This document shows positions 12,511 through 64,000 of a stretch of DNA of 64,000 nt, in pieces (position 1 is the first letter of the stretch; each line of letters begins with the position of its first letter). The DNA is from Selaginella moellendorffii (lineage: Eukaryota; Plantae; Lycopodiophyta). Below the pieces are notes generated by a model. The model did no database searches. It was not told the origin of the DNA and saw only the letters and a list, made by a program, of their open reading frames with translations. Both the position numbers and the translations under genes were made by a program. The DNA is taken from the NCBI RefSeq assembly GCF_000143415.4, contig NW_003314337.1, positions 751,771-815,770 on the forward strand, written 5' to 3'.

Positions 12511-14178
12511 TGAAGACAAATATAACAAAAACTACTATACAAAAAACAAGACTAGCGATACAACCAAAACAACTACAAACTACAGAATATCACTTAGATA
12601 TATAAAATGAATTAGCTCTCACCACTAAAAATCAAGAATTCAAACTTCATGTAAATATTAATGAAGACATTGAAGAATTAAATCTAGGGGTTCTCTCAAA
12701 TCCACAAAACGTCTTAATAGCTACACAACTCAACAAACCTTTTAGATTTGATGCTACTATACTCCTTACTAAATATAAAGATATCTTTGCTTGGTCATAT
12801 AAAGACCTCAAAGGTATACCACCTAATTTATATACACATCGGATCGAATTACTTCTAGGCATTTGACACATTAAACAAATTGCTTACCGGATGAATCCCA
12901 CATTCACTAAAAAAGTAAAAGCTGAAATCAACAAACTCTTTGAAGAAATATTTATATATCCAACACAAATGCCCAATGGCTGTCACCTTTAGTCATTGTA
13001 CCCAAGAAAAATGGGAAATTATGCATCTGTGTGAACTACAAGAAGTTAAATGATGCCACTACAAAAGATGCCTTTCCCATCCCATTTTCAAATAAAATAC
13101 TCAATGCCGTAGCAAGTTATTAGATGTACTCATTTCTTGACGGTTTTTCAAGCTACAATGAAGTACACATAGCTGTCGAAGATCAACATAAAACAGCTTT
13201 CATAAGTCCTTGGGGAGCATATGCATACATGCGAATGCCATTTGGATTAACCAATGCCCCATTTACTTTTCAACGGATCATTACTGATACTTTCCAAGAT
13301 TATCTCACAGATTTCATGCAAGCCTTTATGGATGACTTTTGTGTCTTTGGACCTAAAAACAAACACCTTGAATATCTTAAGAAATATTTTATCAAATGCA
13401 AATAAAACTAAGTTGCTTTTAATCCTGAAAAATGTACTTTCTTTGTTAAATCAGGAATACTACTTGGCCACATGTTTCCACTCAAGGCATTCAAATCAAT
13501 AAAGCTAAAACCGATGTCATTATGAAAATGCAACCACTTCATGATCTCAAAAGTTTGCGAAGTTTTCTGGGCAAGATGGGTCACCATAGAAGATTTATTA
13601 AGGATTATGCCAAAGTTGCTAAACCCTTAACTGATTTACTCAAGAAAGACAAGTTCTATCACTAGACTCAAGAATGTCAGCAAGCATTCTTGTTACTCAA
13701 AGATCAACTTATACAAGCACCAATTCTTGTCCAAACAATCTAGACTCAAGAATTTCTCATACAAGTTGATGCCTCTGACTATGTGCTAGGAGCAATTCTT
13801 TGCTAAAGAAAAGACGATCATTATGATCACCCCATATATTATGCAAGTCAACGACTTTCTCCACCAGAAATGAATTATACAACTACAAAGAAAGAAGCCT
13901 TAAGCATGATACAAATTCTGACACTATTTACTTTCCAACAAAGTCAAAATATGTTGATCATCAAGCATTGATTCATCTACTCAACAAACCCATCTTTAAC
14001 ATATGAATAGCAAGATGGTTTTTGTTATTACAAGAATTAAATTTTGAAATAGTTCACAAACTTGGCAAATAACATGAACAAGCTGATCATCTTAACAGAA
14101 TTACAACCAGGGAAAATATACAAGACCCCAACAATAACTTACCTAATTCACCTCTTTTTAAGATTACCACCCACGATA
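12510..14178 (+). pseudogene. Decayed Ty3/gypsy pol (RT-RNaseH), Athila/Tat-like
   Basis: YSFLDGFSSYN, RMPFGLTNAPFTFQR, FMDDF and VDASDY motifs with many stops and frameshifts. Confidence 0.85.
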
Positions 14179-18351: not shown

Positions 18352-21300
18352 TGTTATAATCCGGCGCAAAAAGACAAAGATCTAGTTGCTCTAGACTATG
18401 CTATGCCACCTCTTGAGGTTCCTCACCACCCAACCACCCCCGAGCTACCTCAAAAGCTCCATTGCGCCGCCGCTCCACTGTGAGCCCTAGGGTAGGTTAA
18501 GTCCCTTACCCTAACATGCCTTAATATACCCTTGAGCCTCCCTTTGACCGACGTTGACCACGTAGTCAAAGCTGGCGCCTAACAATTCTTCCCCCCCAAC
18601 AAAGTCCTTGTCCCAAGGATGAGTTGTACCGGTGATCACCTTTTCTGGGGAATCCTGCTCAAGCTCCTGGTCCATCTTCCACAGCCGTATACATCAAGGA
18701 GGTATTGGGCCCGTCACTCCAAGATAGTACACTTTTCAACTGGCTGACATAAAATACCGGATGAATTTTCACCCCAGCTGGTAGCCGCACTCGATAAGCC
18801 GCTTTACCAATGCGCTCCAGCACTTCATATGGACCAGCATATCGATGGGAGAGTTTATCACTCTTCCCTGTCCGTAAAGGCACCAAGGTGTTCCGTCGCT
18901 CACTTGACAGAAAGATCACTCGCACAAAGACGAGATCACCCACCTTATATTCCCAGAATTGGTGATGCTCATTGGCAAACTTCTCCGTTCTATCCTGAGC
19001 TACTTGCAAATTCCGTCTACACACCACCAGAATCTCATCAAGTTCTGTGGCCAGATTAGTTGCCTCGGAATCAAGCTTATCTTGAACGTCCTTACTCAAA
19101 TGCAATCCCAACTCCACCGCTGTTCGAGGATGCCTTCCAAACATGGCAAAGTAAGGACTTAACTTGGTTCCACTGTGTTGGCTATTGTTGTAAGCAAATT
19201 GCACCAACAGAAGATATAGATCCCACTATCCTTGCCTTTGACCAATGCTACAACGTAGCATATCCTCCACCACCTGATTGACACACTCAGTTTGCCCATC
19301 CGTCTGAGGATGATCTCCACTCGAGAGTTTTAAAGTCACTTGCATAGCCTTTGCAAAGCTTTTCCAAAATCCACTAGTGAACTTTGAATCTCAATCACTA
19401 ATGATGTCCTCTGGCAAACCAAAATCAGGAAAAACCTTCTCCAAATAAACCGCAACCAAGTCTGAAGCAGTGACAGTCTTCTAAAGAGCCAACAACTGCA
19501 CATACTTCGTCAACCGATCCACTATGACCCATACTTGCTCCTTTTGCCTCTGTGTTCGTGGCAAACAAGTGATGAAGTCCATAGAGATACTACACCAACG
19601 GCTATGAGGAATAGGTAAAGGTTGCAAAAGTCCCCCCGGCTTCTCCTGTGGCAGCTTAACCTACTGACAAAGCTTGCATGATTTACAGTACTTGAGAATA
19701 TCAGCCTTCATATTCCTCCAATAAAAGTTGCGCTTAATCAACTCATACGTCTTCTTCCCCCCAAAATGACCGGCCTCTGAACGATCATGATAGTGGAATA
19801 AAACTTGAGTAATTAACACATCCACCTGTGGCAAATATACACGGCCATTGTAGTAGAGAATCCCATCCACCAATGAGAAAGGGGCTTCCATTTGGGCTCG
19901 CAAAGAGGCCACCTCAGCATCCTGAGCCTGAGCATGCTCAACCAACTGCCCAAACTCGCTGACCACCTTACTCAAATGATGACAAAATCGTGTTCGTAAC
20001 GTCGTCACATGACGAACACGAGATAAAGCATCCGCCACCACATTTGATTTTCCCGGACGATACTCAATAGGAAACTCCCCAAACTCCATGAGTTTGACCA
20101 TCCAACGAGCTTGCCTAGTGTTCAACTCCTTCTGTGTGAAAAGATACACAAGTGGTTTGTGATCTGTCAACACCACGAACACTACACCATAAAGATAGTG
20201 CCGCCACGTCTGCAAAGCATGAACAATAGAGAGTAACTCTTGCTCATATGTGGAATAGCGTTGCTCCACGGAATTCAAAGTTCGACTCTCATATGCAATA
20301 GGCTGTCCCTCTTGCATGAGAACTCCTCCCAGTGCATAACCACTTGCATCGCATGTCACCTCGTAAGGTTTCGATGGATCAGCAATGTGAAGCACTGGAG
20401 TTTCGCTCAACAATCGTTTCAGCGCCACAAAACTCTCCTCTTGTGGCTTCTTCCACTCGAATGGCACATTCTTGCGTAACAACCACGTCAAAGGAATAGC
20501 CACCTCTAAAAACTTATGCTGGAAACGTCGGTAGTAACTAGCCATACCAAGAAAACTGCGCAACTCGGCCATTGTAGTCGGTGTAGGCCAGTTTTCCACC
20601 ACAGCCACCTTCCTTGGATCCATCTTGACACCCTTAGATGTCACAATATGCCTAGATATTCCACCTCCGACTTTGCAAATTCACATTTGCTCTTCTTCGC
20701 ATAAAGTTTGCTATCTCGAAATAACAAAAGAACTTTGCGCAAATGCACCCTATGCTCCTCCATATTCTTGCTAAAAACAAGAATATCGTCCAAGAAAATC
20801 TCCACAAACTCATGAAGATAACGCCCAAATACCTCCGTTATCAACCGAGTAAATGTGGCCGGTGCATTCGTCAAACCAAATGGCATAACTGTAAACTCAA
20901 AATGTCCGAAGCTTGTGTTGAATGCCGTCTTGGAGATAGATGCATCATCCATTGCAATCTGATGATATCCACTCCTCAGATCAATCTTGGTAAACACTCG
21001 CACTTCACCAAGTTTGTCCAGGATATCATCCACACATGGCATCGGCATCTTATCCTTCACTGTCTTCTTGTTTAAAGCATGGTAGTCAATACACATCCGC
21101 ATTGAACCGTCCTTCTTCTTCACAAGCAAAACCGGAGCACCAAACGGAGACTTATTTGGCTGAATAAATCCAAACTCAAGTAACTCCTTGACTTGTCATT
21201 GAACTTCTTGCTCCTCCGCATAACTTAACCAAAATGGACGCCGGTAAATTGGCCGCGTCCTCGGCTCCAATGTAATCCCATGCTCCATACCTCGTAATGG

Positions 21301-23254
21301 AGGCAATCCATGAGGAAGTTTAGATGGAAAAACATCAGAAAACTCATCAAGTACATCCCGTACTGCTGCTTCTCCCCCACACGTGCCTTGGTCCCCCAAG
21401 TCACGAACAAACAGCAAGTAACTTGAAAGTGCTTTTCCATTACGACAAGCCCACTTCAAAGATGTAGCAGAGAGTATAACAATTGGTGGTTGAACGCCCT
21501 CGCCAAACCACACATCTTTAACGCCACCATACTCCAGTGAGATACGCTTAATGCTCCACTTTATCTTTGGATCCACCGTCACCAACCATAGCATCCCAAG
21601 AATGAGATTCACACGATGAATATCCGCAAGATAAAAAGTCTCCACACGTGTGGTTTTGCCAACCAACACTTCCAGCCCCTCGACACAAGCATCAAAATGT
21701 TGAGTAGAGGTGGCTGCACCTTCCACTGTGTATGGAAGAACTCCACATGTGACCAGGCCATGCTCCACAACAAACTTTGCCGAAACAAAGTTGTCATCGC
21801 TCTCACTATCCAGTAAAATCTGCATTGGATCGCCACGGAACACGCCCTTTAGCATTAAAGTTGATTCACGCGTATCCTCGAGCTCCATCTTGTTCCACAC
21901 ACAGTTGAGCTGACGAGCAACGATCGAAAGTCGCTTCCTCCGACCGGAATGGTCGTTCTCCTCATCCTCACACTGCAAAGTTTGCAACTTTTTAGTATCG
22001 GACTTACCGTGAGAAGAAGATTGGCCATTCTTCTTGTCCTGCTGCTTGTTCTTCAACTGCGGACAATCAACCTTGTAGTGTCCAAGTTCGCCGCAATGAT
22101 GACAACCCTGTCTATAATTCTTCACAAAGAACTTCTGCTTCTTGGACCCCTTTGCATCTGAAGTAGTCACCACCAACTTCAACTTGTGATGCTTATTCCC
22201 ATCCTTGTGTCCACGGCGATCATCATGACAATTCTCAACAGAAGGACTCCGCGAACGTTTGCGAGACTTGTGCTTGTCATTGTCAAGTCAACGAGCTGCA
22301 TCAAAGAGCTCCTCCAAACTCTTTGTAAGTTGAGAATGACGCAAGTGTTGCCGCATGCTCTCACTATGTAGGCCATCAATGAAGTAGGACTTGTTCTGAT
22401 CTGGATCCTTCGTTGGAACACGACTAATCAAGCGAGTAAGCTTCTCAATATAATCCCCGAGCATCATTTTCCCTTGCTGGAAATGGTGAAGTTCTGTACA
22501 AGCATTCTCCACGTCGTAATGAGGGGCAAAACGTAAACGGAAAGCAGCCTCAAACTCATCCATGGTAGACACTGGTGGTTTCTTATCCGCAACACAGGAC
22601 TCCTCAAGCCAATTCCACCATTGAAGACCCGCATCACGCAAAACCATCGGAATAGCCACTAAAGCCTTTGCATCTGGAGTTCTTCTAGCAGCCAAGAACT
22701 TCTTCACATTGGCTAGCCAAGCGAGACACTCGTCCACACCACCATCACCGGAAAAGGTTGGAATCTTGAGTCGATCTACCAAAGAAGGCTTACTTGGAGC
22801 GCTACCCCGTCCAGCCTCGAGTGCCTCAACACGCCCACGCATGGTATCCATCATGCCATGCATCTCGTCTTGCATCTCTTGCTGATTTTGATTAAGGGCT
22901 TGCAGCTCATGAACCACATCTTGAATGGTCCAAATCTCCGCAGCTTCGTCGGCACCACCATCGACAATAGGATTCCAGTGTTCAGCTTGGTCGGCCATCG
23001 CAACCAATCCTCTGATACCAATGTTATGATCCGGCGCAAAAAGACAAAGATCTAGTTGCCCTAGACTATGCTATGCCACCTCTTGAAGTTCCTCACCACC
23101 CAACCACCCCCGAGCTACCTCAAAAGCTCCACTGCGCCGCTGCTCCACTGTGAGCCCTAGGGTAGGTTAAGTCCCTTACCCTAACATGCCTTAATATACC
23201 CTTGAGCCTCCCTTTGACCGACATTGACCACGTAGTCAAAGCTGGCACCTAACA
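18352..23254 (-). mobile_element. Full-length Ty3/gypsy LTR retrotransposon D (4903 bp), mildly decayed
   Basis: 233-bp LTRs at 18352-18584 and 23022-23254 (TG...CA, 7 transitions), TSD CGTAA at 18347 and 23255, PBS (iMet) at 23010-23020, PPT at ~18585-18598. Confidence 0.95.
18659..23007 (-). pseudogene. gag-pol of element D (gag, Zn knuckle, protease, RT, RNaseH, integrase) with stops and frameshifts
   Basis: CHHCGELGHYKVDC, LLDSE, IDLRSGYHQI, FLDDIL, CDASG, HPQTDGQTE, YAGPYEV. Confidence 0.92.
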
Positions 23255-49206: not shown

Positions 49207-52200
49207 TGTGAGACACAAAATCCCTAGGCCCCAAAGTGGAGCTGGAAGGGTGCCATGTGGTGGTGGCCGAAGCAAAAACCAAACGAGCGTAACACGTTTG
49301 GACTAAAAGCTCCGACTTGAAAGGTTGAGAGCGGGAGTGGAACTCCCAACAAAGTGCTCGAGGAACGAGCACGAAGCGAGCAATAAGCGAGGCTCCAAAA
49401 AGGGACCCAAAAGGACCAACACATGACATGTGGAAGTGTTCGAGATGGACCCGAGTTGGAGTCCGAAGTGGAGTCCGAGAAGGACCCCGAGATGGAGTCC
49501 GAGGTGGAGTCCGAGATGGACCTGAGATGGAGTCCGAGATGGACCCAAGATGGACACGAGATGGGGTCCGAGATGGAGTCCGAGGTGGAGTCCGAGGTGG
49601 ACCCGAGATGGACCCAAAATGGAGTCCGAGATGGAGTCCGAGATGGACCCGAGATGGAGTCCGAGATGGACCCGAGATGGACCCAAAATGGAGTCCGAGA
49701 TGGAGTCCGAGATGGACCTGAAATGGAGTCCGAGATGGACCCGAGATGGAGTCCGAGATGGAGTCCGAGATGGACCCGAGATGGAGTCCGAAGTCGAGAC
49801 CAAGACCGAGACCGAGACCGGGACAGAGACCGGGACCGAGACCGAGACCGAGATCGGGACCGAGACCGAGACCAAGGCTGAGGCCGAGACCGAGCCCGAG
49901 TTCGAGTCCGAGTCCGAGTCCGAGTCCGAGTCCGAGTGCGAGTCCGAGTGCGAGTTCGAGTCTAAGAGGGTGAAAGCCCAAAGCGTTTGTCTCCCAGACC
50001 CCGGGGGGTTTGGTGAGCTCCAACAGTATAGTAAGGGGGAGGACTGCAGTGGAGCCAGTTTGGCCAGGAAAGGCCAGTTTGGCCCAGGAAGGCCAGACCC
50101 AGTGTTGGGTGAGGAGCTGCCCACTGGGAAGTCCAAGACTAGAGTGAACAAAAGCCGACAAGCGGGGTAGCTTGGTGAAGTGTTCAAGAGCCAGCTCTAG
50201 TTCCCCCAGGAGATCAACTGGCCGATGCTCCCAGTCCAAGTGTGGGTGGCACTACCTACTTGGATACCTAGTGTGGCTCAATGGAACCTCGCTCTAAGCC
50301 CATGGCTAGAGCACCCAAATGCAGAAGGCGAGGAGAGTACCCATGAGGCCCGCGTAGGGCCACGGTGTTCCGAAATGTTGTCCCAAAGTCCCAGACTGTG
50401 GAAAGGAAGAGGAGTAGCCCTCTAATGTGGTGACAAGGGACACAGTCACACAGTGAGGAAGTCCTAGAGGACAGTTGGACTTGGTGGTCGGGCCTGTGGG
50501 CCTTGATCCAGTGGCAGTGTTGGTGAACATGGCCATGGACAGGAAGGGACTTGGTGGGGACTGGAAAGGAGATATTGGGGAAGGCTATTCCCCATGTCTG
50601 CAGGCATCCTAAGGATGCTAAGGAGTGGATCTGGGATGATCACTCATGGATGGATGGCCTAGTCTATGAGAGACAGGATTGCAATGTGGGTGGTGTTGGA
50701 CCACCGGTATGACCAAGGTGAATAGGTATGGCCTTAGCGTAACGGGCCGATATGTCGGTGATACCTTGGGGTGTTGATCATGGGATCGGACACGGGGAGC
50801 ACTTGGACCAAGTGCTAAGGTTGAGTGGCATGGATGCCATTCTCGGAGCTAGCAAGCCCCAAGTCCTAAGTTGGACTTATGGAGGTTGTGAATGAGACTC
50901 CTCCAAGTGGTCGGAGATGTGGTTAAGTGACTAAAGTAGAATGGAAAAATTAGTCACTTACAACTTGGTATCGGAGCTGTTCCTTAGTCCGACTTTTATT
51001 GGTGCTCAAGTATATCATCACTTGTGTTGGCATCGGAAGGTCCGAGGAGTGGGCCTATCCTTGCGGAGTAGCAGGTCGGGAAGACATGGCTCTCCATTAC
51101 AGTTCATGTGTGAACTTGTAAACAAAGTGGTGGATAGAAAAGGGCCAATAATGGAACGACTTTGGGATCTTGGGAACAGTATAAGGGTTTCCTCAGAGAG
51201 TTGAGGATGTGATCCAAATGAGCGTTTGACACAGCAAACGGGCTAACGTAGTTGTGGTAAACAACTATAGTTGGGATCATGGGGAAGATGTAGACTCCAA
51301 AACAATAAAGGAGTCACAAGATTACCCTTATATGGTTGAGGCTGGTACTCATAAATTTGAGACCGGAATTGTTGACCGTGGGAGGTCAAATACAGAAGAG
51401 GACACCAGTCCTTGAAATGGTAGCCGGGGCTACCTCTAATAAATGCTGGAACAACCCAAGGAGTTGGGGGTGTACTTAAAGATGAGTTGCTATTCTCATC
51501 ACATGGACAAGTAATCCTAAGGGGCAAAGGTTAGCCCCAAGAAAATCATCAAGTGTCAGAGTAACACTTGCAAAGATTATCCTTGTGAGTAGGACATGAA
51601 TACAAGAAGTTGTATTCCAGTGAGTTGGCACCTCTAAGACTAAGACCTCGCAGGTTGTTGGATTAGCAAAGTCCAAAATGCTGAATGACTCAAGCGGAGT
51701 CAGGGAATGGTCCTAAGGGATTGGTTGGAGCATTTGGACTGAGGTGTATGGGGCCCCATGAGGTATGGGGAGGATCATAAGATCCAAGTATAAGAACAGT
51801 GAGTATCTCATTGATGGCAGAATGTGCCATACTAAAGTTGTGGGAAAGATGTTCCCAAAAGAAAGCAACTTTGGCCCAGAGTTGGGTGCAAACACTATGG
51901 TGCGGTGCTAACGGATAGTTAGCATGAGGAACAACTATATTGGTCTTGGCAAAGACCTAGACACTAATAAGTAGTGTCATAACGGTAGGCTCGTGGGGCT
52001 GATGGTGTGGAGACACCAAATGTGCCAAGGTGTGATACCTTGAGGTTATGATGATGGGTTCATAAGAACCCCTTGCCAAGGGAATCCCAACGGAAGCAGG
52101 AATGGCATGGCCTAAGCTGGAAGGCATGCGGTTGGAGTGTGGTGACCTAGATAATGATGGAGGTGTGGAAGCACCAAGCAATGAGTTGTAGGACTTGACA

Positions 52201-52689: not shown

Positions 52690-53858
52690 TGTAAGGAACC
52701 AACTCGCCGAGGTGTCGTAGGCTAAAGGAACCCCGAAAGCATGACCAAAATGACAAAGAGTTCATCGGATGGGACCAAGTCAAAGATCGAGTCCAAGACC
52801 GACTCTAGGACCGAGTTCGAGATAGAGTCCGGAATCGAGTCCAAGACCGACTCGGGGACCGAGTTCGAGTCCGAGTTCGAGACCGAGTTCGAGACGGAGT
52901 CCGAGATCCGAAATCGGGTCCGAGACCGAGTCCGAAATCGAGTCCGAGGTCGGGCCCGAGATCGGGTCCGAGATCGAGTCCGCGATCGAGTCCGAGACCG
53001 AATCCGAAGTTGGATCTGAAATCGGATCCGAGATCGAGCCAGAGACTAAGTCCAAATACTAATACGGGTCAAGGGGTGAAAGCCCAAAGCGTGCGTCCCC
53101 CAGGGGGGGGGGGCTGCAGGGGGTTCCAAAAGTATAGTAGGGATAGTGAGGTCCAGGAACCAGTTTTGAAGGGACTCTCCAGTTGGGCTTCCAAACTGAC
53201 TTGAGGTTGGGACTGGGACCGAGGGGCCTTGGGTGGGAGTGAGCATGGACTTGGCTGGTGCCGGAGGGGCCATCCGAGGAAGTGCTCAAGAGCAGCTCCC
53301 ACTCCCGAAAGGGAAACCGATTGCGGTGCTCCCGGCTCATGTGGAGTGGTGCCCCACTTGAGTACCATGCGGCTCATTGGTCCTCGCCCTTCCTAGGGGC
53401 TTGGGCCTTCCTTCGGGATGGAAGTGGGGGGCGAGAGGTACCCATACCGGGCCAGTGTTGCACTCAAGACTTGGGATTTAGAGGGTCCCATGATCAAGTC
53501 TTGTGGTACCAAGGGATGTTAGGAACCTGGAAGCTTGGTGTGCTTGGCTGCTTGTGCTTGCGGGGAGTGTAGCCGAACCTTAGTCCAGTCTAACCCGGGG
53601 AGGGGGATTGGGAGTGATTTGGGAATCCGTGGAAGGATGGCTAACACTCCATTGCTCGTGCAGTGAGTAGCTGAAACCAAGTAGGAGCTGGTACCATAGG
53701 CGAGAACCTTGGTGAGGGAACTTAGAAAAAGCCAAGGCAGTGTTGGACGGATAGACGAGGTAAGCTGGCAAATTGGAAAAGAAAAATTTGTGGCTTACAA
53801 TTTGGTATCGGAGCCTTTATCTCAGTTCTAGCGAAGGATAGAGGCGGATTGCTGGGAG

Positions 53859-56800
53859 ATGGCAAGGGCAACGCGTAAGCGAACCCAGGCGGAGACGGAA
53901 CCTCCGCCGGAGCTGGAGCCTCCGGTCGAACAAGAGGCTATGGATGAGGAATCCTTGCATGAGGAGGACTCTAGTGAGGAAACTTCCAAACAGGAGTCCG
54001 GTGGCGAGGTTCGGTCGTCCAAGGCTCGATTGGACGTGCTAGAAGGACAGTTGGCACAGACCAATGCCCTGCTGGAAACTCTCGTACGCAAGCTAAAGCG
54101 TGACGAGAGGCGGAAGAAAAAGAAAAAGACTGCGGATGCTGGCAGCGCAGAAGGTGCGGATCTTTCGGCCGGGACTGAGGCAAAACCAGACAAGGTCGAA
54201 CAGACCGAAGTAGAATCAGTCCCTCAGGCAGTTCCCAAGTACAAACCAAAGCCCCCACCGGTCTTCAAGGGAGTGAACGACTATAAAGTGGTGGAGGATT
54301 GGTTTTACGATATGGAGGACTACTTCCGAGCGTTGCGATTACCGAGCTCGGAGAAGGTCCCATGTGCAAAACCATACTTGGCAGATAATGCCAAGTCTTG
54401 GTGGAGAACGACGGAGGCCAACGAAGGACCAGTGGCCACTTGGGACATGATGAAGGCGAGGATCCGCGCAACATACGTTCCTCCGAATGCCACTCTGCAT
54501 CTGAGAGATGAGCTGAGTAGGCTAAAGCAGACTGGAACCATCCAGGAATATGTGAATGGGTTCATGGCAAAGAGGATACTTGTCACGGACATGGCGGATA
54601 TGGATGCGTTCCATGCCTTCATATCAGGTTTGCAAACCTGGGCTCGCGGTGAGGTGATGCGGTGGAACCCGACCAACTACAAGGAAGCGTTGGATGCGGC
54701 CATCAAGGTGCATTTCAACGATAATCTGCGAAAGGGGAACACGACGGGGTCGGGATCCACGTTTAGCAAAGGGGCCAAACCAAGGGGAACGTATAGCAAG
54801 GGGAAATTCAAAAAGAGTTTCTCTAAGAATGAGTCCTCGGGGTTCCGGAAAGGCAAATCTGGTGGCCAGCGAGCGAGTACGTGGGGGAGTCAAGCGAAAA
54901 AAGACAAGCCCACGGATAAGAAGGTCAAGTCGTATAGCAGCGTGGGAAACAACATATGCTACAACTGCGGCGAAGCGGGACACTTCTCGAGGGAATGTCC
55001 CTACCCGAAGAAGGCCAGAGCCAATATGGCCATCAAGTCGGGTGAAGTCCAAACTGAGGTATGTGATCCAGTCCCTAACTCAAAGTTACTCATTACACGA
55101 GCAACTTTGGTAGAGAGTCGTTCGCGACATCTACTAGCCCTCCGAGGGAAGCTCGGAGGTAGCTTTGTTAAGATCCTTATTGACACGGGTGCTTCGGATA
55201 ATTTTGTGGCTGCAGACATAGTCCGGCAAGCCGGACTAACGGTGCAGCGGCTAGGCGAACCAAGGACTATAGAGTTTGTTCAGGGTAGCCAAAGCACCGA
55301 TGAGGTACTTCGACAAGCGAGAGTCGAAGTGGGGACATGGAAAGTGGACATGGATTTCACCGTCTTGGACATGGCGGGATTTGACGTGATCTTCGGAATG
55401 GATTGGTTTAATCGGTTCGTGGTAGCCCTGCATGGACAAGGTAGGAACCTTGTGGTATTGGCGAATGCCCAAGGAAGAAGATCTAGGGTGGAGGCCCAGG
55501 ATCTAAAGGTAGGGCAAAGCAAGGCCAAAGAGTCATGCTTAAACCTGGTGTCCACGAGAGGACAACTCACTAAAGGAACTAAAGCAGCCTTTTTGTGCTT
55601 ACTCTCGGTGAAGAGTGACAAAAAGACAAGAACGGAAGAAGTACCTTTAGTGATCCAGCAGGTGCTGGACCAATTCCAGGATACCATGCCGGAGGAGCTA
55701 CCGGCGGGGTTGCCCCCCGCACGACCGATAGAACATAAGATTGAGCTGGTCGAGGGTGCTGAGGCGGTGGTTCGTCCACCCTATCGATTGAACGAAAAAG
55801 AACTCAAGGAGCTCAAGAGCCAACTAGAGGAGTTGGTGGACAAAGGGTATGTTAGGTTGAGCAAGTCACCGTATGGGGCGCCGGTGCTATTCGTGAAAAA
55901 GAAAGATGGATCTATGCGCATGTGCATAGACTACCGGTTGCTCAACAAATATACCAAGAAGAACAAGTACCCTTTGCCAAGGATTGAGGACCTGTTCGAT
56001 AGGTTGGGAAAGGCAAAATACTTCTCGAGGATTGACCTAAGGTCAGGATACTACCAGATCAGGGTAGCTGAGGAAGATGTCGAGAAGACAACCTATCGAA
56101 CGAGGTATGGGAGCTTTGAGTTTTTGGTGATGCCCTTTGGGCTGTGCAATGCGCCGGCAACGTTTTCGGCGTTGATGAACCACGTCTTTGTACCCTATCT
56201 GGATCACTTCGTGGTCGTCTATATTGACGACATCCTGATCTATAGCGAGACGCTAGAGGAGCATGCCGAACACTTGGCGAAGGTGTTTGAGAAACTAAGG
56301 GAACACAAGCTGTATGCTAAAGAGAGCAAATGTGACTTTGCTCAACAAGAGGTAAAGTTTCTCGGGCATGTGGTGGGCCAGGACGGGCTCAAAGTGGACC
56401 CGGAGAAGGTCCAAGCGATCCAGGAATGGGAGCGACCATCGAATGTACATGAGTTGAGGGCGTTCCTGGGGCTATGCAACTACTATCGAAAGTTTATCAG
56501 ACACTATTCGAGAGTAGCCCTGCCCTTAACGGATCAAACAGGAAAAGGGAAGATGGTATGGACAGCGGAATGCGAGGCGGCATTCGTCCACCTCAAAGGG
56601 AAGTTGAGGAAGGCTCCGGTGTTGGCATTACCAGACTTTGGTAAGGACTTTGAGGTAGACACGGATGCTTCGGACTTTGCGTTGGGCGCAGTTTTGAAGC
56701 AAGACAACCATCCAGTAGCGTTCTTCTCGAAGAAGCTGGACAAGGCTCAACGGAAGTGGCCTGCCCACGAGAAGGAATTGTTTGCGGTGGTCAAGGCGCT

Positions 56801-58631
56801 CAAGGAGTGGCGACACTACCTTGGGAGACACTTCAAGGTTTACACGGACAATGTGGCAACGAAACACTTCTTGTCACAGCCCGACCTAAGGGGAAAACAA
56901 GGTCGGTGGGCCAATGCTTTGGCCGAGTTTGATTGCGAGATCCTGTACAAGCCTGGGAAGAGCAACATCGTGGCAGATGCGCTAAGTCGAAAAGCGAGCT
57001 TGAAGTTGGCGATATCTAGCGCGACAGCAACCTTTTGGGACGATGTGCGGACCGCATACGAGAGTGATGGTCTAGCACAAGAAGTGTTGCTGAGGAATCT
57101 GGAGGCGCGGGAAGCTCACCAGAGAGGTGAGCTGCCAACGGAAGAGAAAACGGGCTATGCGGAACGCAACGGACTCATATATTACAAGCAAACGAGGGTG
57201 TATGTTCCAGAAGGGGAACTAAGGAAGGTAGCCTTGGAAGAGTGTCATGACGGACCTCTTGCGGGACACGGCGGAGTGCCCAAGACGATGGGCTTACTCA
57301 AAAGGAAGTACCATTGGCCAGATATGGCTAAGGACGTCCAAGACTATGTAAAGACATGCCCAATATGTCAGCAAGTCAAAGCCGTGACGAAGGCTAGTGG
57401 GGGCTTGTTGCAAAGCATCCCCATTCCAGATCGTCCGTGGAAATGTCTCACGATGGACTTCATCACGGGACTACCCCCAAGCGAGGGGTTCGATGCGATA
57501 TTCGTGGTGGTGGACCGATTTTCAAAGATGGCACATTTCATACCCACCACAACGGATGTGGATGCGGAAGGTGTGGCGAAGCTGTTCTTCGAACAAGTGG
57601 TTCGAGTGCGGGGAAGGCCGGAAGAGATTATCTCAGATCGAGATAAGATCTTCACCAGTAGGTTCTGGAGGACACTCCTAGAACAGTATCGCACCAAGTT
57701 GAAATTCAGTACGGCCTATCACCCACAGACAGGTAATGGGTATTGAGTCAAGATTGATGGCACTAACACTTCTTGACAGACGGACAAACGGAAAGGGTGA
57801 ATAGGCAGCTGGAGGATTATTTGCGATGCTATGTCTCGGGAGACCAGACCGACTGGGTAAGTCATTTGGGACTTGCGGAAATGTGTTATAACAACTCACC
57901 ACATTCGAGCATCGGGGTGAGTCCATGGGAAGTCATCAATGGGCGAGCTATTGAAGGTCCTGTGGAACTCGGCGTGGCCGAGTATCATGGAGAGTTACCC
58001 GCAGTGGAGGCATTCACGGCGGAAAGACTCAACATTTGGAATCTAGTGAGGGATTCCTTGGAACGGGCTCAACAAAGGCAAACTAAGTACGCGAACCAAA
58101 AGCGTCGGGATGTGGAGTTCCAAGCTGGGGAGAAGGTGTTGCTGAACACCAAGAACCTCAGGCTACCAAGTGGGATCAGCCGGAAGTTGACCCAAAGGTA
58201 AAAATGCATGTATTCCTGTAAATGAATTGATCTTGAGTTCCTTAAGCAGGTTCGCGGGGCCTTACGAGATTGAGGCTCGAATCGGTAAAGTGGCTTACCG
58301 TCTCCGACTTCCTCGAGAGATGGGGAAGATGCATCCCGTGTTCCACGTGAACTTACTCAAGCCGTATTTTGAGGATCCGCTTCGCAAGGACCAAGTAAGA
58401 CCTTTACCTGAGGTTATCCAAGGGGAGGAGGAATACGAAGTCGAGGCCATCCTCAATGCGCGCAAGAGCAAGCGACAAGGACGCGAGGTGAGAGAGTTCC
58501 ATGTGAAGTGGAAAGGATTTCCACACTGCGAAGCAACATGGGAACCGGAGGAGAACCTAGCGAACGCGCGAGATCTAGTGGAGGAATTTCTGCATGGCAG
58601 AACTCTATGTACTTATGCAAAGTTCAATTAA
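53859..58631 (+). CDS. Gag-Pol polyprotein with chromodomain; spliced model join(53859..57732,57780..58197,58250..58631), 1557 aa
   Basis: [51 protein letters not shown], and a group I-like chromodomain (YEVEAIL..VKWKGF..TWEP). Two GT-AG segments must be removed to join the frames. Confidence 0.9.
57733..57779 (+). other. 47-nt spliceosomal-type intron in the integrase core
   Basis: AG|GTAATG...CACTAAC...TTCTTGACAG|; removal restores [12 protein letters not shown]. Confidence 0.88.
58198..58249 (+). other. 52-nt spliceosomal-type intron before the GPY/F motif
   Basis: AG|GTAAAA...TTGAT...CCTTAAGCAG|G, AT-rich; removal restores [13 protein letters not shown]. Confidence 0.88.
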
Positions 58632-59033
58632 AAGTATCAATTTGAGAAGTTGAGCAATGGCATATGTTGGGACCCGAAGGCGCGCCGAAGGTAAGCTAAT
58701 TAGCATGGGTTAGCTAGGTCGACCAGGCGTAGGGAGCTACGCCCGACTCCCTGCGGGGATGTCGAAACCGTAGACGTATTCTACGGAGGTTGGGTTCGAG
58801 TCCCAACCCCCTAGTAAAGCAAGGCTGGGTTCAAGTCCCGACCCTATACTAGGACGTGGTGAGGGGAGGAGTATAGGGACACCTATATTCCGTTGTCATG
58901 GGCTCTTGGCCGAGGAGGCTAACTTAGGCACACCGCTAAGTGGGGGGATGCCCCCGGAGACATGGTCAACAAGTCGTAGGATAAAACGAGACGTTCGATG
59001 TGGGCATCGAACTTCTTCTATGGGTGGTGGAGT

Positions 59034-62000
59034 TGTAAGGAACCAACTCACCGAGGTGTCGTAGGCTAAAGGAACCCCGAAAGCATGACCAAAATGACAA
59101 AGAGTTCATCGGATGGGACCAAGTCGAAGATCGAGTCCAAGACCGACTCTAGGACCGAGTTCGAGATAGAGTCCGGAATCGAGTCCGAGACCGACTCGGG
59201 GACCGAGTTCGAGTCCGAGTTCGAGACCGAGTTCGAGACGGAGTCCGAGATCCGAAATCGGGTCCGAGACCGAGTCCGAGGTCTAGTCCGAGGTCGGGTC
59301 CGAGATCGGGTCCGAGATCGAGTCCGTGATCGAGTCCGAACCCGAATCCGAAGTCGGATCTGAAATCGGGTCCGAGATCGAGCCAGAGACTAAGTCCAAA
59401 TACTAATACGGGTCAAGGGGTGAAAGCCCAAAGCGTGCGTCTCCCAGGGGGGGGGGGGCTGCAGGGGGTTCCAAAAGTATAGTAGGGATAGTGAGGTCCA
59501 GGAACCAGTTTAGAAGGGACTCTCCAGTTGGGCTTCCAAACTGACTTGAGGTTGGGACTGGGACCGAGGGGCCTTGGGTGGGAGTGAGCATGGACTTGCC
59601 TGGTGCCGGAGGGGCCATCCAAGGAAGTGCTCAAGAGCAGCTCCCACTCCCGAAAGGGAAACCGATTGCGGTGCTCCCGGCTCATGTGGAGTGGTGCCCC
59701 ACTTGAGTACCATGCGGCTCATTGGTCCTCGCCCTTCCTAGGGGCTTGGGCCTTCCTTCGGGATGGAAGTGGGGGGCGAGAGGTACCCATACCGGGCCGC
59801 TAGGCCACGGTGTTTCGCCCCGGCATCCCGAAGCAAGTGTTGCACTCAAGACTTGGGATTTAGAGGGTCCCATGATCAAGTCTTGTGGTACCAAGGGAAG
59901 TTAGGAACCTGGAAGCTTGGTGTGCTTGGCTGCTTGTGCTTGCGGGGAGTGTAGCCGAACCTTAAGTCCAGTCTAACCCGGGGAGGGGGATTGGGAGTGA
60001 TTTGGGAATCCGTAGATGGATGGCTAACACTCCATTGCTCGTGCAGTAAGTAGCTGAGACCAAGTAGGAGCTGGTACCATAGGCGAGAACCTTGGCGAGG
60101 GAACTTAGCAAAGGCCAAGGCGGTGTTGGACGGATAGACGAGGTAAGCTGGCAAATTGGAAAGGAAAAATTTGTGGCTTACAATTTGGTATCGGAGCCTT
60201 TTCCTCAGTTCTAGCGAAGGATAGAGGCGGATTGCTGGGAGATGGCAAGGGCAGGGCGTAAGCGAACCCAAGCGGAGACGGAACCTCCGCCAGAGCTGGA
60301 GCCTCCGGTCGAACAAGAGGCTATGGATGAGGAATCCTTGCATGAGGAGGACTCTAGTGAGGAAACTTCCAAACAGGAGTCCGGTGGCGAGGTTCGGTCG
60401 TCCAAGGCTCGATTGGACGTTCTAGAAGGTCAATTGGCGCAGACTAATGCCCTGCTGGAGACTCTCGTACGCAAGCTAAAGCGTGACGAGAAGCGGAAGA
60501 AAAGGCGAAAGACTGCGGATGCTGGCAGCGCAGAAGGTGCGGACCCTTCGGCGGGGACTGAGGCAAAACCAGACAAGGTCGAACAGACTGAAGTGGAATC
60601 AGTCCCTCAGGCAGTTCCCAAGTACAAACCAAAGCCCCCACCGGTCTTCAAGGGAGTGAATGACTATAAGGTGGTGGAGGATTGGTTTTACGATATGGAG
60701 GACTACTTCCGAGCGTTGCGGTTACCAAGCTCGGAGAAGGTCCCATGTGCAAAACCATACTTGGCAGATAATGCCAAGTCTTGGTGGAGAACAACGGAGG
60801 CCAACGAAGGACCGGTGGTCACTTGGGACATGATGAAGGCGAGGATCCGCGCAACATACGTTCCTCCGAATGCCACTCTGCATCTGAGGGATGAACTGAG
60901 TAGGCTGAAGCAGACTGGAACCATCCAGGAATATGTGAATGGGTTCATGGCAAAGAGGATACTTGTCACGGACATGGGGGATATGGATGCGTTCCATGCC
61001 TTCATATCAGGTTTGCAAACCTGGGCTCGCGGTGAGGTGATGCGCTGGAACCCGACCAACTACAAGGAAGCGTTGGATGCGGCCATCAAGGTGCATTTCA
61101 ACGATAACCTGCGAAAGGGGAACACGACGGGGTCGGGATCCACGTTTCACAAAGGGGCCAAACCAAGGGGAACATATAGCAGGGGGAAATTCAAGAAGAG
61201 TTTCTCTAAGAATGAGTCCTCGGGGTTCCGGAAAGGCAAATCCGGTGGCCAGCGAGCGAGTACGTGGGGGAGTCAAGCGAAAAGAGACAAACCCACGGAT
61301 AAGAAGGTCAAGTCATATAGCAGCGTGGGAAACAACGTATGCTACAACTGCGGTGAAGCGGGACACTTCTCAAGGGAATGTCCCTACCCGAAGAAGGCCA
61401 GAGCCAATATGGCCATCAAGTCGGGTGAAGTCCAAACTGAGGTATGTGATCCAGTCCCTAACTCAAAGTTGCTCATTACACGAGCAACTTTGGTAGAGAG
61501 TCGTTCGCGACATCTACTAGCCCTCCGAGGGAAGCTCGGAGGTAGCTTTGTTAAGATCCTTATTGACACGGGTGCTTCGGATAATTTTGTGGCTGCAGAC
61601 ATAGTCCGGCAAGCCGGACTAACGGTGCAGCGGCTAGGCGAACCAAGGACTATAGAGTTTGTTCAAGGTAGCCAAAGCACCGATGAGGTACTTCGACAAG
61701 CGAGAGTCGAAGTGGGGACATGGAAAGTGGACATGGATTTCACCGTCTTGGATATGGCGGGATTTGACGTGATCTTCGGAATGGATTGGTTTAATCGGTT
61801 CGTGGTAGCCTTACATGGACAAGGTAGGAACCTTGTGGTATTGGCGAATGCCCAAGGAAGAAGATCTAGGGTGGAGGCCCAGGATCTAAAGGTAGGGCAA
61901 AGCAAGGCCAAAGAGTCATGCTTAAACCTGGTGTCCACGAGAGGACAACTCACTAAAGGAACTAAGGCAGCCTTTTTGTGCTTACTCTCGGTGAAGAGTG

Positions 62001-64000
62001 ACAAAAAGACAAGAACGGAAGAAGTGCCTTTAGTGATCCAGCGAGTGTTGGACCAATTCCAGGATACCATGCCGGAGGAGCTACCGGCGGGGTTGCCCCC
62101 CGCACGACCGATAGAACATAAGATTGAGCTGGTCGAGGGCGCTGAGGCGGTGGTTCGTCCACCCTATCGTTTGAACGAAAAAGAACTCAAGGAGCTCAAG
62201 TGCCAACTAGAGGAGTTGGTGGACAAAGGGTATGTTAGGTTGAGCAAGTCGCTGTATGGGGCGCCGGTATTATTTGTGAAAAAGAAAGATGGATCTATGC
62301 GCATGTGCATAGATTACCGGTTGCTCAACAAGTATACCAAGAAGAACAAGTACCCTTTGCCAAGGATTGAGGACCTGTTCGATAGGTTGGGAAAGGCAAA
62401 ATACTTCTCGAGGATTGACCTAAGGTCAGGATACTACCAGATCAGGGTAGCCGAGGAAGATGTCGAGAAGACAACCTGTCGAACGAGGTATGGGAGCTTT
62501 GAGTTTTTGGTGATGCCCTTTGGGCTGTGCAATGCGCCGGCAACGTTTTCGGCGTTGATGAACCACGTCTTTGTACCCTATCTGGATCACTTTGTGGTCG
62601 TCTATATTGACGACATCCTAATCTATAGCGAGACGCTGAAGGAGCATGCCGAACACTTGGCGAAGGTGTTTGAGAAACTAAGGGAACACAAACTGTATGC
62701 TAAAGAGAGCAAATGTGACTTTGCTCAACAAGAGGTAAAGTTTCTCGGGCATGTGGTGGGCCAGGACGGGCTCAAGGTGGACCCGGAGAAGGTCCAAGCG
62801 ATCCAGGAATGGGAACGACCATCGAATGTACATGAGTTGAGGGCGTTCCTGGGGCTATGCAACTACTATCGAAAGTTTATCAGACACTATTCGAGAGTAG
62901 CCCTGCCCTTAACGGACCAAACAGGAAAAGGGAAGATGGTATGGACAGCGGAATGCGAGGCGGCATTCGTCCACCTCAAAGGGAAGTTGAGGAAGGCTCC
63001 GGTGTTGGCATTACCAGACTTTGGTAAGGACTTTGAGGTAGACACGGATGCTTCGGACTTTGCGTTGGGCGCAGTTTTGAAGCAAGACAACCATCCAGTA
63101 GCGTTCTTCTCGAAGAAGCTGGACAAGGCTCAACGGAAGTGGCCTGCCCACGAGAAGGAATTGTTTGCGGTGGTCAAGGCGCTCAAGGAGTGGCGACACT
63201 ACCTTGGGAGACACTTCAAGGTTTACACGGACAATGTGGCAACGAAACACTTCTTGTCACAGCCCGACCTAAGGGGAAAACAAGGTCGGTGGGCCAATGC
63301 TTTGGCCGAGTTTGATTGCGAGATCCTGTACAAGCCTGGGAAGAGCAACATCGTGGCAAATGCGCTAAGTCGAAAAGCGAGCTTGAAGTTGGCGATATCT
63401 AGCGCGACAGCAACCTTTTGGGACGATGTGCGGACCGCATACGAGAGTGATGGTCTAGCACAAGAAGTGTTGCTGAGGAATCTGGAGGCGCGGGAAGCTC
63501 ACCAGAGAGGTGAGCTGCCAACGGAAGAGAAAACGGGCTATGCGGAACGCAACGGACTCATATATTACAAGCAAACGAGGGTGTATGTTCCAGAAGGGGA
63601 ACTAAGGAAAGTAGCCTTGGAAGAGTGTCATGACGGACCTCTTGCGGGACACGGCGGAGTGCCCAAGACGATGGGCTTACTCAAAAGGAAGTATCACTGG
63701 CCAGATATGGCTAAGGACGTCCAAGACTATGTAAAGACATGTCCAACATGTCAGCAGGTCAAAGCCGTGACGAAGGCTAGTGGGGGCTTGTTGCAAAGCA
63801 TCCCCATTCCAGATCGTCCGTGGAAATGTCTCACGATGGACTTCATCACGGGACTACCCCCAAGCGAGGGGTTCGATGCGATATTCGTGGTGGTGGACCG
63901 ATTTTCAAAGATGGCACATTTCATACCCACCACAACGGATGTGGATGCGGAAGGTGTGGCGAAACTGTTCTTCGAACAAGTGGTTCGAGTGCGGGGAAAG
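59034..64000 (+). mobile_element. Chromovirus C, unit 2, sharing the central LTR (runs off the window)
   Basis: The LTR is followed directly by PBS (60186) and a second gag-pol nearly identical to unit 1. Confidence 0.95.
60242..64000 (+). CDS. Gag-Pol of unit 2 (partial, open to the window end)
   Basis: ATG at 60242; colinear with 53859-57617; no stop seen. Confidence 0.9.

What the first reader, a model, noticed from the sequence alone, without database searches (positions are those of the whole stretch)
57733..58249. LTR retrotransposon whose integrase is split by two short spliceosomal-type introns
Seen: the otherwise pristine 1295-codon gag-pol stops mid-integrase and continues in two further frames. 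The breaks are 47 nt (57733-57779, AG|GTAATG..CTAAC..CAG|) and 52 nt (58198-58249, AG|GTAAAA..GCAG|G). Both are more AT-rich than the exons, are not multiples of 3, and contain stops. Precise GT-AG removal restores [12 protein letters not shown] and [12 protein letters not shown]. Element D in this window has both motifs contiguous (HPQTDGQTE, KLSHRYAGPYEV), an internal control. Known: LTR elements copy through RNA and normally lack CDS introns; the described splicing cases (copia Gag subgenomic RNA, Ogre PR-RT intron) are not inside integrase. Inference: intron 1 lies between the second Asp and the catalytic Glu of the DDE triad, so unspliced RNA encodes a dead integrase without a chromodomain. 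Splicing would gate integration competence while unspliced RNA is the replicated genome.
Basis: partly seen in the sequence, partly recalled or inferred. Interest (0 to 1): 0.95.

Follow-up and report, generated by a model that had tools for sequence, protein, structure and literature searches.

The report
Spikemoss jumping gene with spliced integrase introns
A young LTR retrotransposon of a spikemoss (probably Selaginella moellendorffii) carries two tiny true introns inside its integrase gene, so it can make a complete integrase only from spliced RNA while it copies itself from unspliced RNA, which is very unusual for elements that replicate through RNA.

Summary
A 1295-codon gag-pol ORF (53859-57746) stops inside the integrase. 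Two GT..AG segments, 47 nt (57733-57779) and 52 nt (58198-58249), separate it from two further coding pieces that hold the catalytic Glu, the SH3-like domain and the chromodomain.

RNA data support splicing. In run X1 one 1083-nt contig lacks exactly both segments, and no contig there covers them. One raw RNA-Seq read from another study shows the 47-nt junction. Run X3 holds the unspliced form.

Differences between copies are mostly synonymous in the frames that only splicing creates. Six relatives have no break at either position: one element in this window and five public loci.

A third intron (53760-53825), also absent in X1, removes the end of U5 and the whole primer-binding site. Leader-spliced mRNA therefore should not be copied back, which would explain how the introns persist. 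A fourth, alternative intron (55059-55215) would give a Gag-only mRNA; support for it is weak.

The closest known case is Ogre, which has one intron between protease and RT. I rate this a new variant of a known kind.

The scan met this family before on other DNA: several first-reader notes and one follow-up, s1-337385. I could not run a genome-wide census of copies or check other Selaginella species.

The parts
52690..53799 (+). 5' LTR (about 1110 bp, TGTAAG...CTTACA)
   Evidence: It repeats at 59034 onward with 96-98% identity. The termini are read. It lacks 37 nt after 53453 that the second LTR and an X3 contig carry.
53760..53825 (+). Leader intron, 66 nt (GTAAGC...CTCAG). It covers the last 40 nt of U5 and the whole PBS.
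   Evidence: X1 contig record 1 joins 53757>53824, GT..AG with the cut 2 places further right. The X1 depth in this bin fits zero cover of the intron. Donor, PBS and acceptor are identical in unit 2.
53803..53815 (+). Primer-binding site TGGTATCGGAGCC, of the initiator-tRNA-Met type with one G:U position
   Evidence: It lies 3 nt after the LTR end. The 12-mer occurs 3 times in the window against 0 expected, each time at the end of an LTR. The tRNA assignment rests on general knowledge of plant LTR elements.
53859..57732 (+). Coding exon 1: gag (CCHC), protease, RT, RNase H, integrase HHCC and core up to ...HPQT
55059..55215 (+). Candidate alternative intron, 157 nt (GTATGT...GCAG). Its removal puts a stop two codons after the junction, giving a Gag-only product of about 401 aa.
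   Evidence: One X3 contig joins 55056>55214, but only 28 nt lie on one side. X1 and X3 contigs both begin at 55214. The sequence is, and the sites are conserved in unit 2. Support is weak.
57733..57779 (+). Integrase intron 1, 47 nt (GTAATG..CTAAC..CAG), between the second Asp and the catalytic Glu
   Evidence: X1 contig record 5 skips exactly these 47 nt, and one raw RNA read of X17 does too. X3 contig record 13 keeps them.
57780..58197 (+). Coding exon 2: the rest of the integrase core (catalytic Glu) and the start of the SH3-like domain
   Evidence: It reads in frame only after splicing. It is 29-47% identical to the integrases of relatives, which are contiguous on both sides. Three of the 5 listed differences from the X1 contig are synonymous.
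58198..58249 (+). Integrase intron 2, 52 nt (GTAAAA...GCAG), inside the SH3-like (GPY/F) domain
   Evidence: X1 contig record 5 skips exactly these 52 nt. The Pfam SH3_Tf2-1 match of exon 3 starts at profile position 24.
58250..58631 (+). Coding exon 3: the rest of the SH3-like domain, the chromodomain, and the stop at 58629-58631
   Evidence: All 6 listed differences from the X1 contig are synonymous in this frame.
59020..59033 (+). Putative polypurine tract (GGGTGGTGGAG) just before the next LTR
   Evidence: Sequence. The assignment is by position only.
59034..60182 (+). Second LTR, shared with unit 2 of a tandem LTR-internal-LTR-internal array
   Evidence: The PBS follows again at 60186.
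60242..64000 (+). Unit 2 gag-pol. It is open as far as the window goes and ends before the integrase introns.
   Evidence: It is 97.7% identical to unit 1. There are 82 differences in 3757 nt, 58 of them at third codon positions, 60 synonymous against 22 not, and no stop.

Best explanation
The two segments are genuine U2-type spliceosomal introns that belong to a young, multi-copy chromodomain-bearing Ty3/gypsy LTR retrotransposon of a spikemoss.

Unspliced RNA is the form that is reverse-transcribed, which is why the DNA copy keeps the introns. Its reading frame yields Gag-PR-RT-RNase H and an integrase stump without the catalytic Glu, the SH3-like domain and the chromodomain. Only mRNA from which the host spliceosome has removed both introns encodes the full integrase, which must then act in trans.

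A third intron in the leader removes the end of U5 and the primer-binding site. Leader-spliced mRNA therefore cannot prime reverse transcription, which would keep spliced, intron-less copies from arising.

Shown: the anatomy, the precise junctions in RNA-derived data, selection on the downstream frames, and the absence of the introns in relatives.

Inferred: that spliced and unspliced RNAs divide the roles of translation and replication, that leader and integrase splicing happen on the same molecules, and that the arrangement benefits the element.
For: Anatomy.

Splicing: X1 record 5 (1083 nt) lies on 57407-57727, 57775-58195 and 58248-58588, that is, it lacks exactly both GT..AG segments. X1 record 1 lacks 53760-53825.

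X1 bin depths fit zero cover of all three introns (my arithmetic): 9.36 x 140/187 = 7.01, 9.36 x 135/187 = 6.76 and 8.91 x 137/187 = 6.53. X1 therefore holds only the spliced form, and this argues against genomic DNA as its source.

X17, labelled TRANSCRIPTOMIC RNA-Seq raw reads from another study, gives one read across the 47-nt junction with 41 nt on its shorter side. X3 holds the unspliced leader and intron 1, so both forms exist.

Selection: 9 of the 11 listed X1-versus-window differences in exons 2 and 3 are synonymous in the frames that only splicing creates. Unit 1 against unit 2 shows 60 synonymous and 22 non-synonymous differences.

Controls: element D in the window and five public relatives at 40-50% identity over the integrase pieces (L001, L002, L012-L014) are uninterrupted at both positions.

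[quoted passage not shown] From general knowledge that cluster means very short introns, so 47-66 nt fits this host.

PBS inside the leader intron.
Against: RNA support is thin. X1 is labelled only 'RNA? (a guess)', there is a single raw spliced read, expression in X17 and X18 is very low, and I had only one read-laying run and no DNA-run control.

I could not survey other genomic copies. The protein collections hold no member of the family. That most young copies keep the introns therefore rests on unchecked first-reader notes.

Short contigs cannot show that leader and integrase splicing occur on one molecule. Nothing shows that truncated and full-length proteins are made, or that the element is active now.
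Confidence: 0.8

Rival explanations
1. The introns are real and are spliced, but they have no regulatory role. On this reading they arose by chance in a host with very short, efficiently recognised introns. They persist only because packaging takes unspliced RNA, and enough spliced mRNA exists to supply integrase.
For: Relatives lack them, so they are a recent, lineage-specific gain. Short flanking repeats at both junctions (GACAG, AGGT) fit gain at proto-splice sites. No data show regulated splicing.
Against: The element has two further spliced or spliceable sites with plausible functions, a leader intron that contains the PBS and a Gag-only alternative intron. This suggests a systematic use of splicing. 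X1 and X3 show opposite all-or-none splicing states.
Confidence: 0.3
2. The segments are inactivating insertions in a non-autonomous lineage. The 'spliced' contig and read would then come from transcripts or DNA of intron-less autonomous relatives of the same family.
For: The X1 contig differs from this copy at 29 of 1083 positions, so it comes from another copy. I could not check the genome for intron-less copies.
Against: - Two independent insertions would both have to carry exact GT..AG ends with extended consensus.
- X1 also lacks the leader segment that holds the PBS, which no functional master copy could lack.
- X1 shows no intron-bearing contig, although intron-bearing DNA copies exist.
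- Exons 2 and 3 of this intron-bearing copy differ from the X1 contig mainly at synonymous sites, and its ORFs are intact.
Confidence: 0.07
3. It is a domesticated host gene derived from a retrotransposon. It would have acquired introns like any host gene and would no longer be a mobile element.
For: It has canonical host-like introns and an intact ORF under purifying selection.
Against: It has full LTRs with TG..CA ends, a PBS, a putative PPT, and a second 97.7% identical unit in tandem. Many further loci are reported by the scan (unchecked).
Confidence: 0.03

Closest known systems
Ogre (Tat/Ogre lineage, Ty3/gypsy) of pea and Medicago
   Same: It is a plant LTR retrotransposon whose polyprotein coding region is interrupted by an intron. 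[quoted passage not shown]
   Different: Ogre has one intron, between gag-protease and RT-RH-INT; the two ORFs lie on average 274 bp apart. It is a large non-chromovirus element of legumes. Here there are two introns of 47 and 52 nt inside the integrase of a 6.4-kb chromovirus of a lycophyte, plus a leader intron over the PBS.
copia / EVADE / BARE Gag-only subgenomic RNA by alternative splicing (Ty1/copia)
   Same: They use host splicing to set protein ratios from a single gag-pol ORF (PMC5580714 and PMC3735527, listed; PMC12786077). The candidate 157-nt intron 55059-55215 would work the same way.
   Different: There, splicing removes pol to make extra Gag, and the full-length RNA encodes everything. 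Here the full-length RNA cannot encode a complete integrase. The superfamily is also different.
Retroviruses: splice donor in the leader, and foamy-virus Pol from a spliced mRNA
   Same: Unspliced RNA is the genome and spliced RNAs serve only as messengers. Sequences needed for replication or packaging lie in what splicing removes. This comparison rests on general knowledge and the titles listed.
   Different: Retroviral introns are long and span whole genes. No retrovirus I know of splits its integrase domain with small constitutive-type introns.
Chromoviruses of Selaginella (SM-Tcn1, and 'unclassified chromoviruses' of Neumann et al. 2019)
   Same: Same host genus, a chromodomain at the integrase C-terminus, and the same Ty3/gypsy domain order (PMC2864245; PMC6317226).
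   Different: The passages of those papers that mention introns say nothing about introns in these elements. Most Tcn1 elements lack a tRNA-type PBS and are predicted to self-prime, whereas this element has a tRNA-type PBS. I did not determine its clade.

Membership tests
Ty3/gypsy chromovirus LTR retrotransposon | Long terminal repeats with TG...CA ends flanking an internal region | tested here: met
   52690-53799 and 59034-60182 are 96-98% identical, with TGTAAG...CTTACA ends.
Ty3/gypsy chromovirus LTR retrotransposon | PBS next to the 5' LTR and a purine tract before the 3' LTR | tested here: met
   TGGTATCGGAGCC lies 3 nt after the LTR. GGGTGGTGGAG lies before 59034 (by position only).
Ty3/gypsy chromovirus LTR retrotransposon | Domain order gag-PR-RT-RNase H-IN with a C-terminal chromodomain | tested here: met
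   Pfam hits appear in this order. Chromo scores E 2e-16 in exon 3.
Ty3/gypsy chromovirus LTR retrotransposon | Multiple dispersed copies with target-site duplications | tested here: inconclusive
   The window holds two tandem units. Other loci are known only from unchecked scan notes. I did not examine target-site duplications, and the array runs off the window.
U2-type spliceosomal intron | GT...AG ends with extended donor and acceptor consensus and a branch-site-like motif | tested here: met
   The ends read AG|GTAATG..CTAAC..CAG| and AG|GTAAAA..TTGAT..GCAG|.
U2-type spliceosomal intron | Precise removal from RNA | tested here: met
   An X1 contig lacks exactly both segments, and one X17 raw RNA read shows junction 1. 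Caveat: the RNA label of X1 is a guess, though the depth arithmetic argues against DNA.
U2-type spliceosomal intron | Removal restores an open frame and homology | tested here: met
   The relatives are contiguous there.
U2-type spliceosomal intron | Size and composition typical of the host's introns | tested here: inconclusive
   GC is 0.33-0.40 against 0.52 in exons. The host's intron length distribution clusters with that of most fungi (PMC6157073). I measured no host introns here.
Ogre lineage (intron-bearing Tat/Ogre elements) | Intron between gag-protease and RT-RH-INT ORFs; non-chromovirus | tested here: not met
   The constitutive introns lie in the integrase, and the element has a chromodomain. 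It works like Ogre but is not a member.
Tcn1 clade of chromoviruses | Most members lack a tRNA-complementary PBS and self-prime; close to fungal Tcn1 | tested here: inconclusive
   A tRNA-type PBS is present. The best public relatives are Closterium and Planoprotostelium proteins at about 50% identity. I built no clade tree.

The most novel reading that the evidence does not exclude
This retroelement family has made host splicing an obligatory switch between two RNA fates. Fully spliced RNA loses its primer-binding site and can only be translated; it alone encodes a working integrase with its chromodomain. Unspliced RNA is the only replicable form and encodes a dead integrase. Integration competence must therefore be supplied in trans, and the introns can never be lost by retrotransposition. 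It would be the first LTR retrotransposon known with small constitutive-type introns inside a catalytic domain.
Probability: 0.5. Interest if true: 0.8.

Novelty: new variant of a known kind. Interest (0 to 1): 0.72.

Why it matters
Elements that copy themselves through RNA are expected to lose introns. That loss is the classic proof of retrotransposition. A 2025 review says plant LTR retrotransposons generally lack introns, with Ogre and EVADE as the notable exceptions (PMC12786077).

This family keeps two minimal introns inside its integrase and a third over its own primer-binding site. That gives a compact natural system for three questions: how a retroelement separates messenger RNA from genomic RNA, how introns are gained and kept in mobile DNA, and whether splicing helps an element look like a host gene to silencing and export machinery.

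It also matters in practice. Annotation pipelines that expect uninterrupted pol ORFs would score such copies as defective.

Tried and rejected
Family members in protein collections:
- The ORF1 integrase part found only relatives at 54% identity or less.
- Exon 2 against proteins of similar length found nothing.
- Exon 2 against 1.8 billion representatives reached at most about 51% identity.
- An exact look-up of ORF1 found nothing on record.
So I could not make a census of copies or compare other Selaginella species.

Other searches:
- A metagenome scan with exon 2 gave only distant hits.
- Rfam and ARAGORN found nothing in the element.
- The Ogre splicing paper is not held. Its result is cited through PMC6317226.
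- Literature searches for introns in LTR-element integrase or pol found nothing beyond Ogre.

Limits on read evidence: only one read-laying run was allowed, so I have no DNA-run control and no test of runs X4-X10.

Rejected readings:
- GT..AG by chance alone. It is too common to count as evidence on its own and was not used as such.
- A frameshift or readthrough reading. Stops lie in both segments, and RNA junctions were seen.

I built no joined or consensus sequence of the element. The pieces were searched apart.

Full report
**What is there.** The window's last 11 kb hold a tandem array, LTR-internal-LTR-internal, of one Ty3/gypsy family.

Unit 1 has these parts:
- A 1.1-kb LTR at 52690-53799, with TGTAAG...CTTACA ends.
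- A primer-binding site TGGTATCGGAGCC at 53803-53815. This 12-mer occurs three times in the window against none expected, each time at an LTR end.
- A 1295-codon ORF at 53859-57746.

Pfam finds gag, zinc knuckle, protease, RT, RNase H, the integrase HHCC finger and the integrase core up to its last profile position in that ORF. The ORF ends ...[10 protein letters not shown]. Two further ORFs follow in the other frames. The last one holds the rest of an SH3_Tf2-1 domain, from profile position 24, and a chromodomain. The next LTR starts at 59034, after a purine-rich stretch.

Notes of earlier agents name the organism as Selaginella moellendorffii. I did not test that.

**Check of the observation.** The breaks are exactly as described: 57733-57779 (47 nt, AG|GTAATG..CTAAC..CAG|) and 58198-58249 (52 nt, AG|GTAAAA..GCAG|).
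- Both lengths are not multiples of 3, and both segments meet an in-frame stop within 12 nt.
- GC is 0.40 and 0.33, against 0.51-0.52 in the exons.
- Read across these boundaries, the codons continue the conserved integrase motifs.
- Element D in the same window (minus strand, about 18700-22800) has HPQTDGQTE and KLSHRYAGPYEV uninterrupted.

GT..AG pairs at 40-80 nt spacing are frequent here, 928 in the coding region, so the dinucleotides by themselves are no evidence. The exact coincidence with the frame and homology breaks is.

**RNA evidence.**
- In run X1 (Logan contigs, transcriptome-sized, kind guessed as RNA), contig record 5 (1083 nt, depth 9.4) lies on 57407-57727, 57775-58195 and 58248-58588. 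It lacks precisely both segments, with GT..AG ends once the 5- and 2-letter ambiguity is allowed for.
- The X1 bin depths equal what is expected if nothing covers the introns: 9.36 x 140/187 = 7.01 and 9.36 x 135/187 = 6.76. X1 therefore holds only the joined form. This argues against genomic DNA, in which intron-bearing copies exist.
- Run X17, labelled TRANSCRIPTOMIC RNA-Seq raw reads and from a different study, has very few reads on the element. One of them crosses the 47-nt junction with 41 nt on its shorter side.
- Run X3 has a contig that runs straight through intron 1 (57594-58202) and through the leader, so the unspliced form also exists in sequence data.

**Selection.**
- Of the listed differences between the X1 contigs and this copy, 9 of 11 in exons 2 and 3 are synonymous in the frames that only splicing creates. 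The figure for exon 1 is also 9 of 11. Caveat: one search lists only its best-supported differences.
- Units 1 and 2 differ at 82 of 3757 ORF positions. Of these, 58 are at third codon positions and 60 are synonymous against 22 not. Unit 2 is open as far as the window reaches.
- The copies therefore descend from lineages that were under protein-level selection, including on the parts downstream of the introns.

**Relatives.** No public protein is closer than about 50% identity. Five relatives whose DNA I fetched are contiguous at both positions: two Closterium loci, one Logan contig, and two loci of assembly GCA_030144725.1. The introns are therefore a derived feature of this Selaginella lineage.

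[quoted passage not shown] By general knowledge that cluster means very short introns, so 47-66 nt fits this host.

- X1 record 1 joins 53757 to 53824. That is a 66-nt GT..AG intron at 53760-53825, and the bin depth 8.91 x 137/187 = 6.53 again fits zero cover. It removes the last 40 nt of the LTR (U5) and the whole PBS. Donor, PBS and acceptor are identical in unit 2. An mRNA spliced there cannot prime minus-strand synthesis.
- X3 has one contig that joins 55056 to 55214 (157 nt, GTATGT...GCAG, only 28 nt on one side). Contigs of both X1 and X3 begin at 55214. Removal puts a stop two codons after the junction, giving a Gag-only message of about 401 codons. The sites are conserved in unit 2. 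This is weakly supported.

**How it most likely works.**
- The DNA copy keeps the introns, so the template of reverse transcription is unspliced RNA. That RNA encodes Gag-PR-RT-RNase H and an integrase stump without the catalytic Glu, the SH3-like domain and the chromodomain.
- Complete integrase comes only from spliced mRNA and must act in trans.
- If leader and integrase introns are removed from the same molecules, spliced mRNAs are translation-only. X1 has all three out and X3 has the leader and intron 1 in, which is suggestive, but the contigs are too short to prove it. Translation-only mRNAs would explain why the introns are not lost.
- Whether this is an adaptive control or a tolerated accident in a host with very efficient short-intron splicing is open. 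An adaptive role could be integrase dosage, a host-gene-like look to export and silencing machinery, or separation of RNA pools as in BARE.

**Comparison with what is known.**
- A 2025 review says plant LTR retrotransposons generally lack introns, with Ogre and EVADE as the notable exceptions (PMC12786077).
[quoted passage not shown] The principle is thus known.
- What differs here is that the introns are small and multiple, that they sit inside a catalytic domain of a chromovirus in a lycophyte, and that a leader intron covers the PBS.
- Papers on Selaginella chromoviruses do not report introns in the passages I read (PMC2864245; PMC6317226). Full-text searches found no report of integrase introns in LTR elements.
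- I file it as a new variant of a known kind.

**Earlier scan notes.** The scan noted the same family at many other places of this genome. One follow-up (s1-337385) reached the same reading for intron 2 on another copy. These are leads, not independent evidence.

**Limits.**
- There is no genome-wide census and no cross-species comparison.
- There is one raw spliced read, and the RNA label of X1 is a guess.
- There is no protein evidence.
The pieces were searched apart.

Noticed in passing
window 53760-53825: A 66-nt GT..AG leader intron covers the U5 end and the whole primer-binding site. It is removed in the X1 transcript contig.
   Followed up: yes
window 55059-55215: A candidate 157-nt alternative intron (GTATGT...GCAG) at the gag/protease border. 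Splicing gives a stop two codons later, hence a Gag-only mRNA as in copia, EVADE and BARE. Support is one X3 contig with a 28-nt side, plus X1 and X3 contigs that both start at 55214.
   Followed up: partly
window 52690-64000: Two units of the element lie in tandem and share the middle LTR (LTR-internal-LTR-internal). They are 97.7% identical, and the differences are mostly synonymous. They look like two once-active lineages joined by recombination or nested integration, not a simple duplication.
   Followed up: partly
window 53453/53454 versus 59799-59832: The first LTR lacks about 37 nt that the second LTR carries. An X3 contig has 37 extra letters at the same place.
   Followed up: no
window 58690-58870: The 3' untranslated region folds into a row of hairpins (-78 kcal/mol, z -3.1). 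Two of them carry tRNA T-arm-like motifs (GGGTTCGAGTCCCAACC, GGGTTCAAGTCCCGACC). ARAGORN and Rfam find nothing there.
   Followed up: partly
window 49474-50977: A related LTR with the same kind of 12-nt tandem repeats ends in CTTACA and is followed by the identical PBS 12-mer at 50966. No gag-pol follows it before 52690, so it may be a truncated or non-autonomous relative. Its leader lacks the GTAAGC donor at the aligned position.
   Followed up: partly
window 12953-14069 (+) and 18700-22800 (-): Two other gypsy-type elements. The second (element D) has an uninterrupted integrase and served as the internal control.
   Followed up: partly
beyond the window end: Unit 2's integrase introns are expected about 116 nt past the window end (offset 6383). 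The scan's note on them (s1-419442) sits 1822 nt past the end.
   Followed up: no
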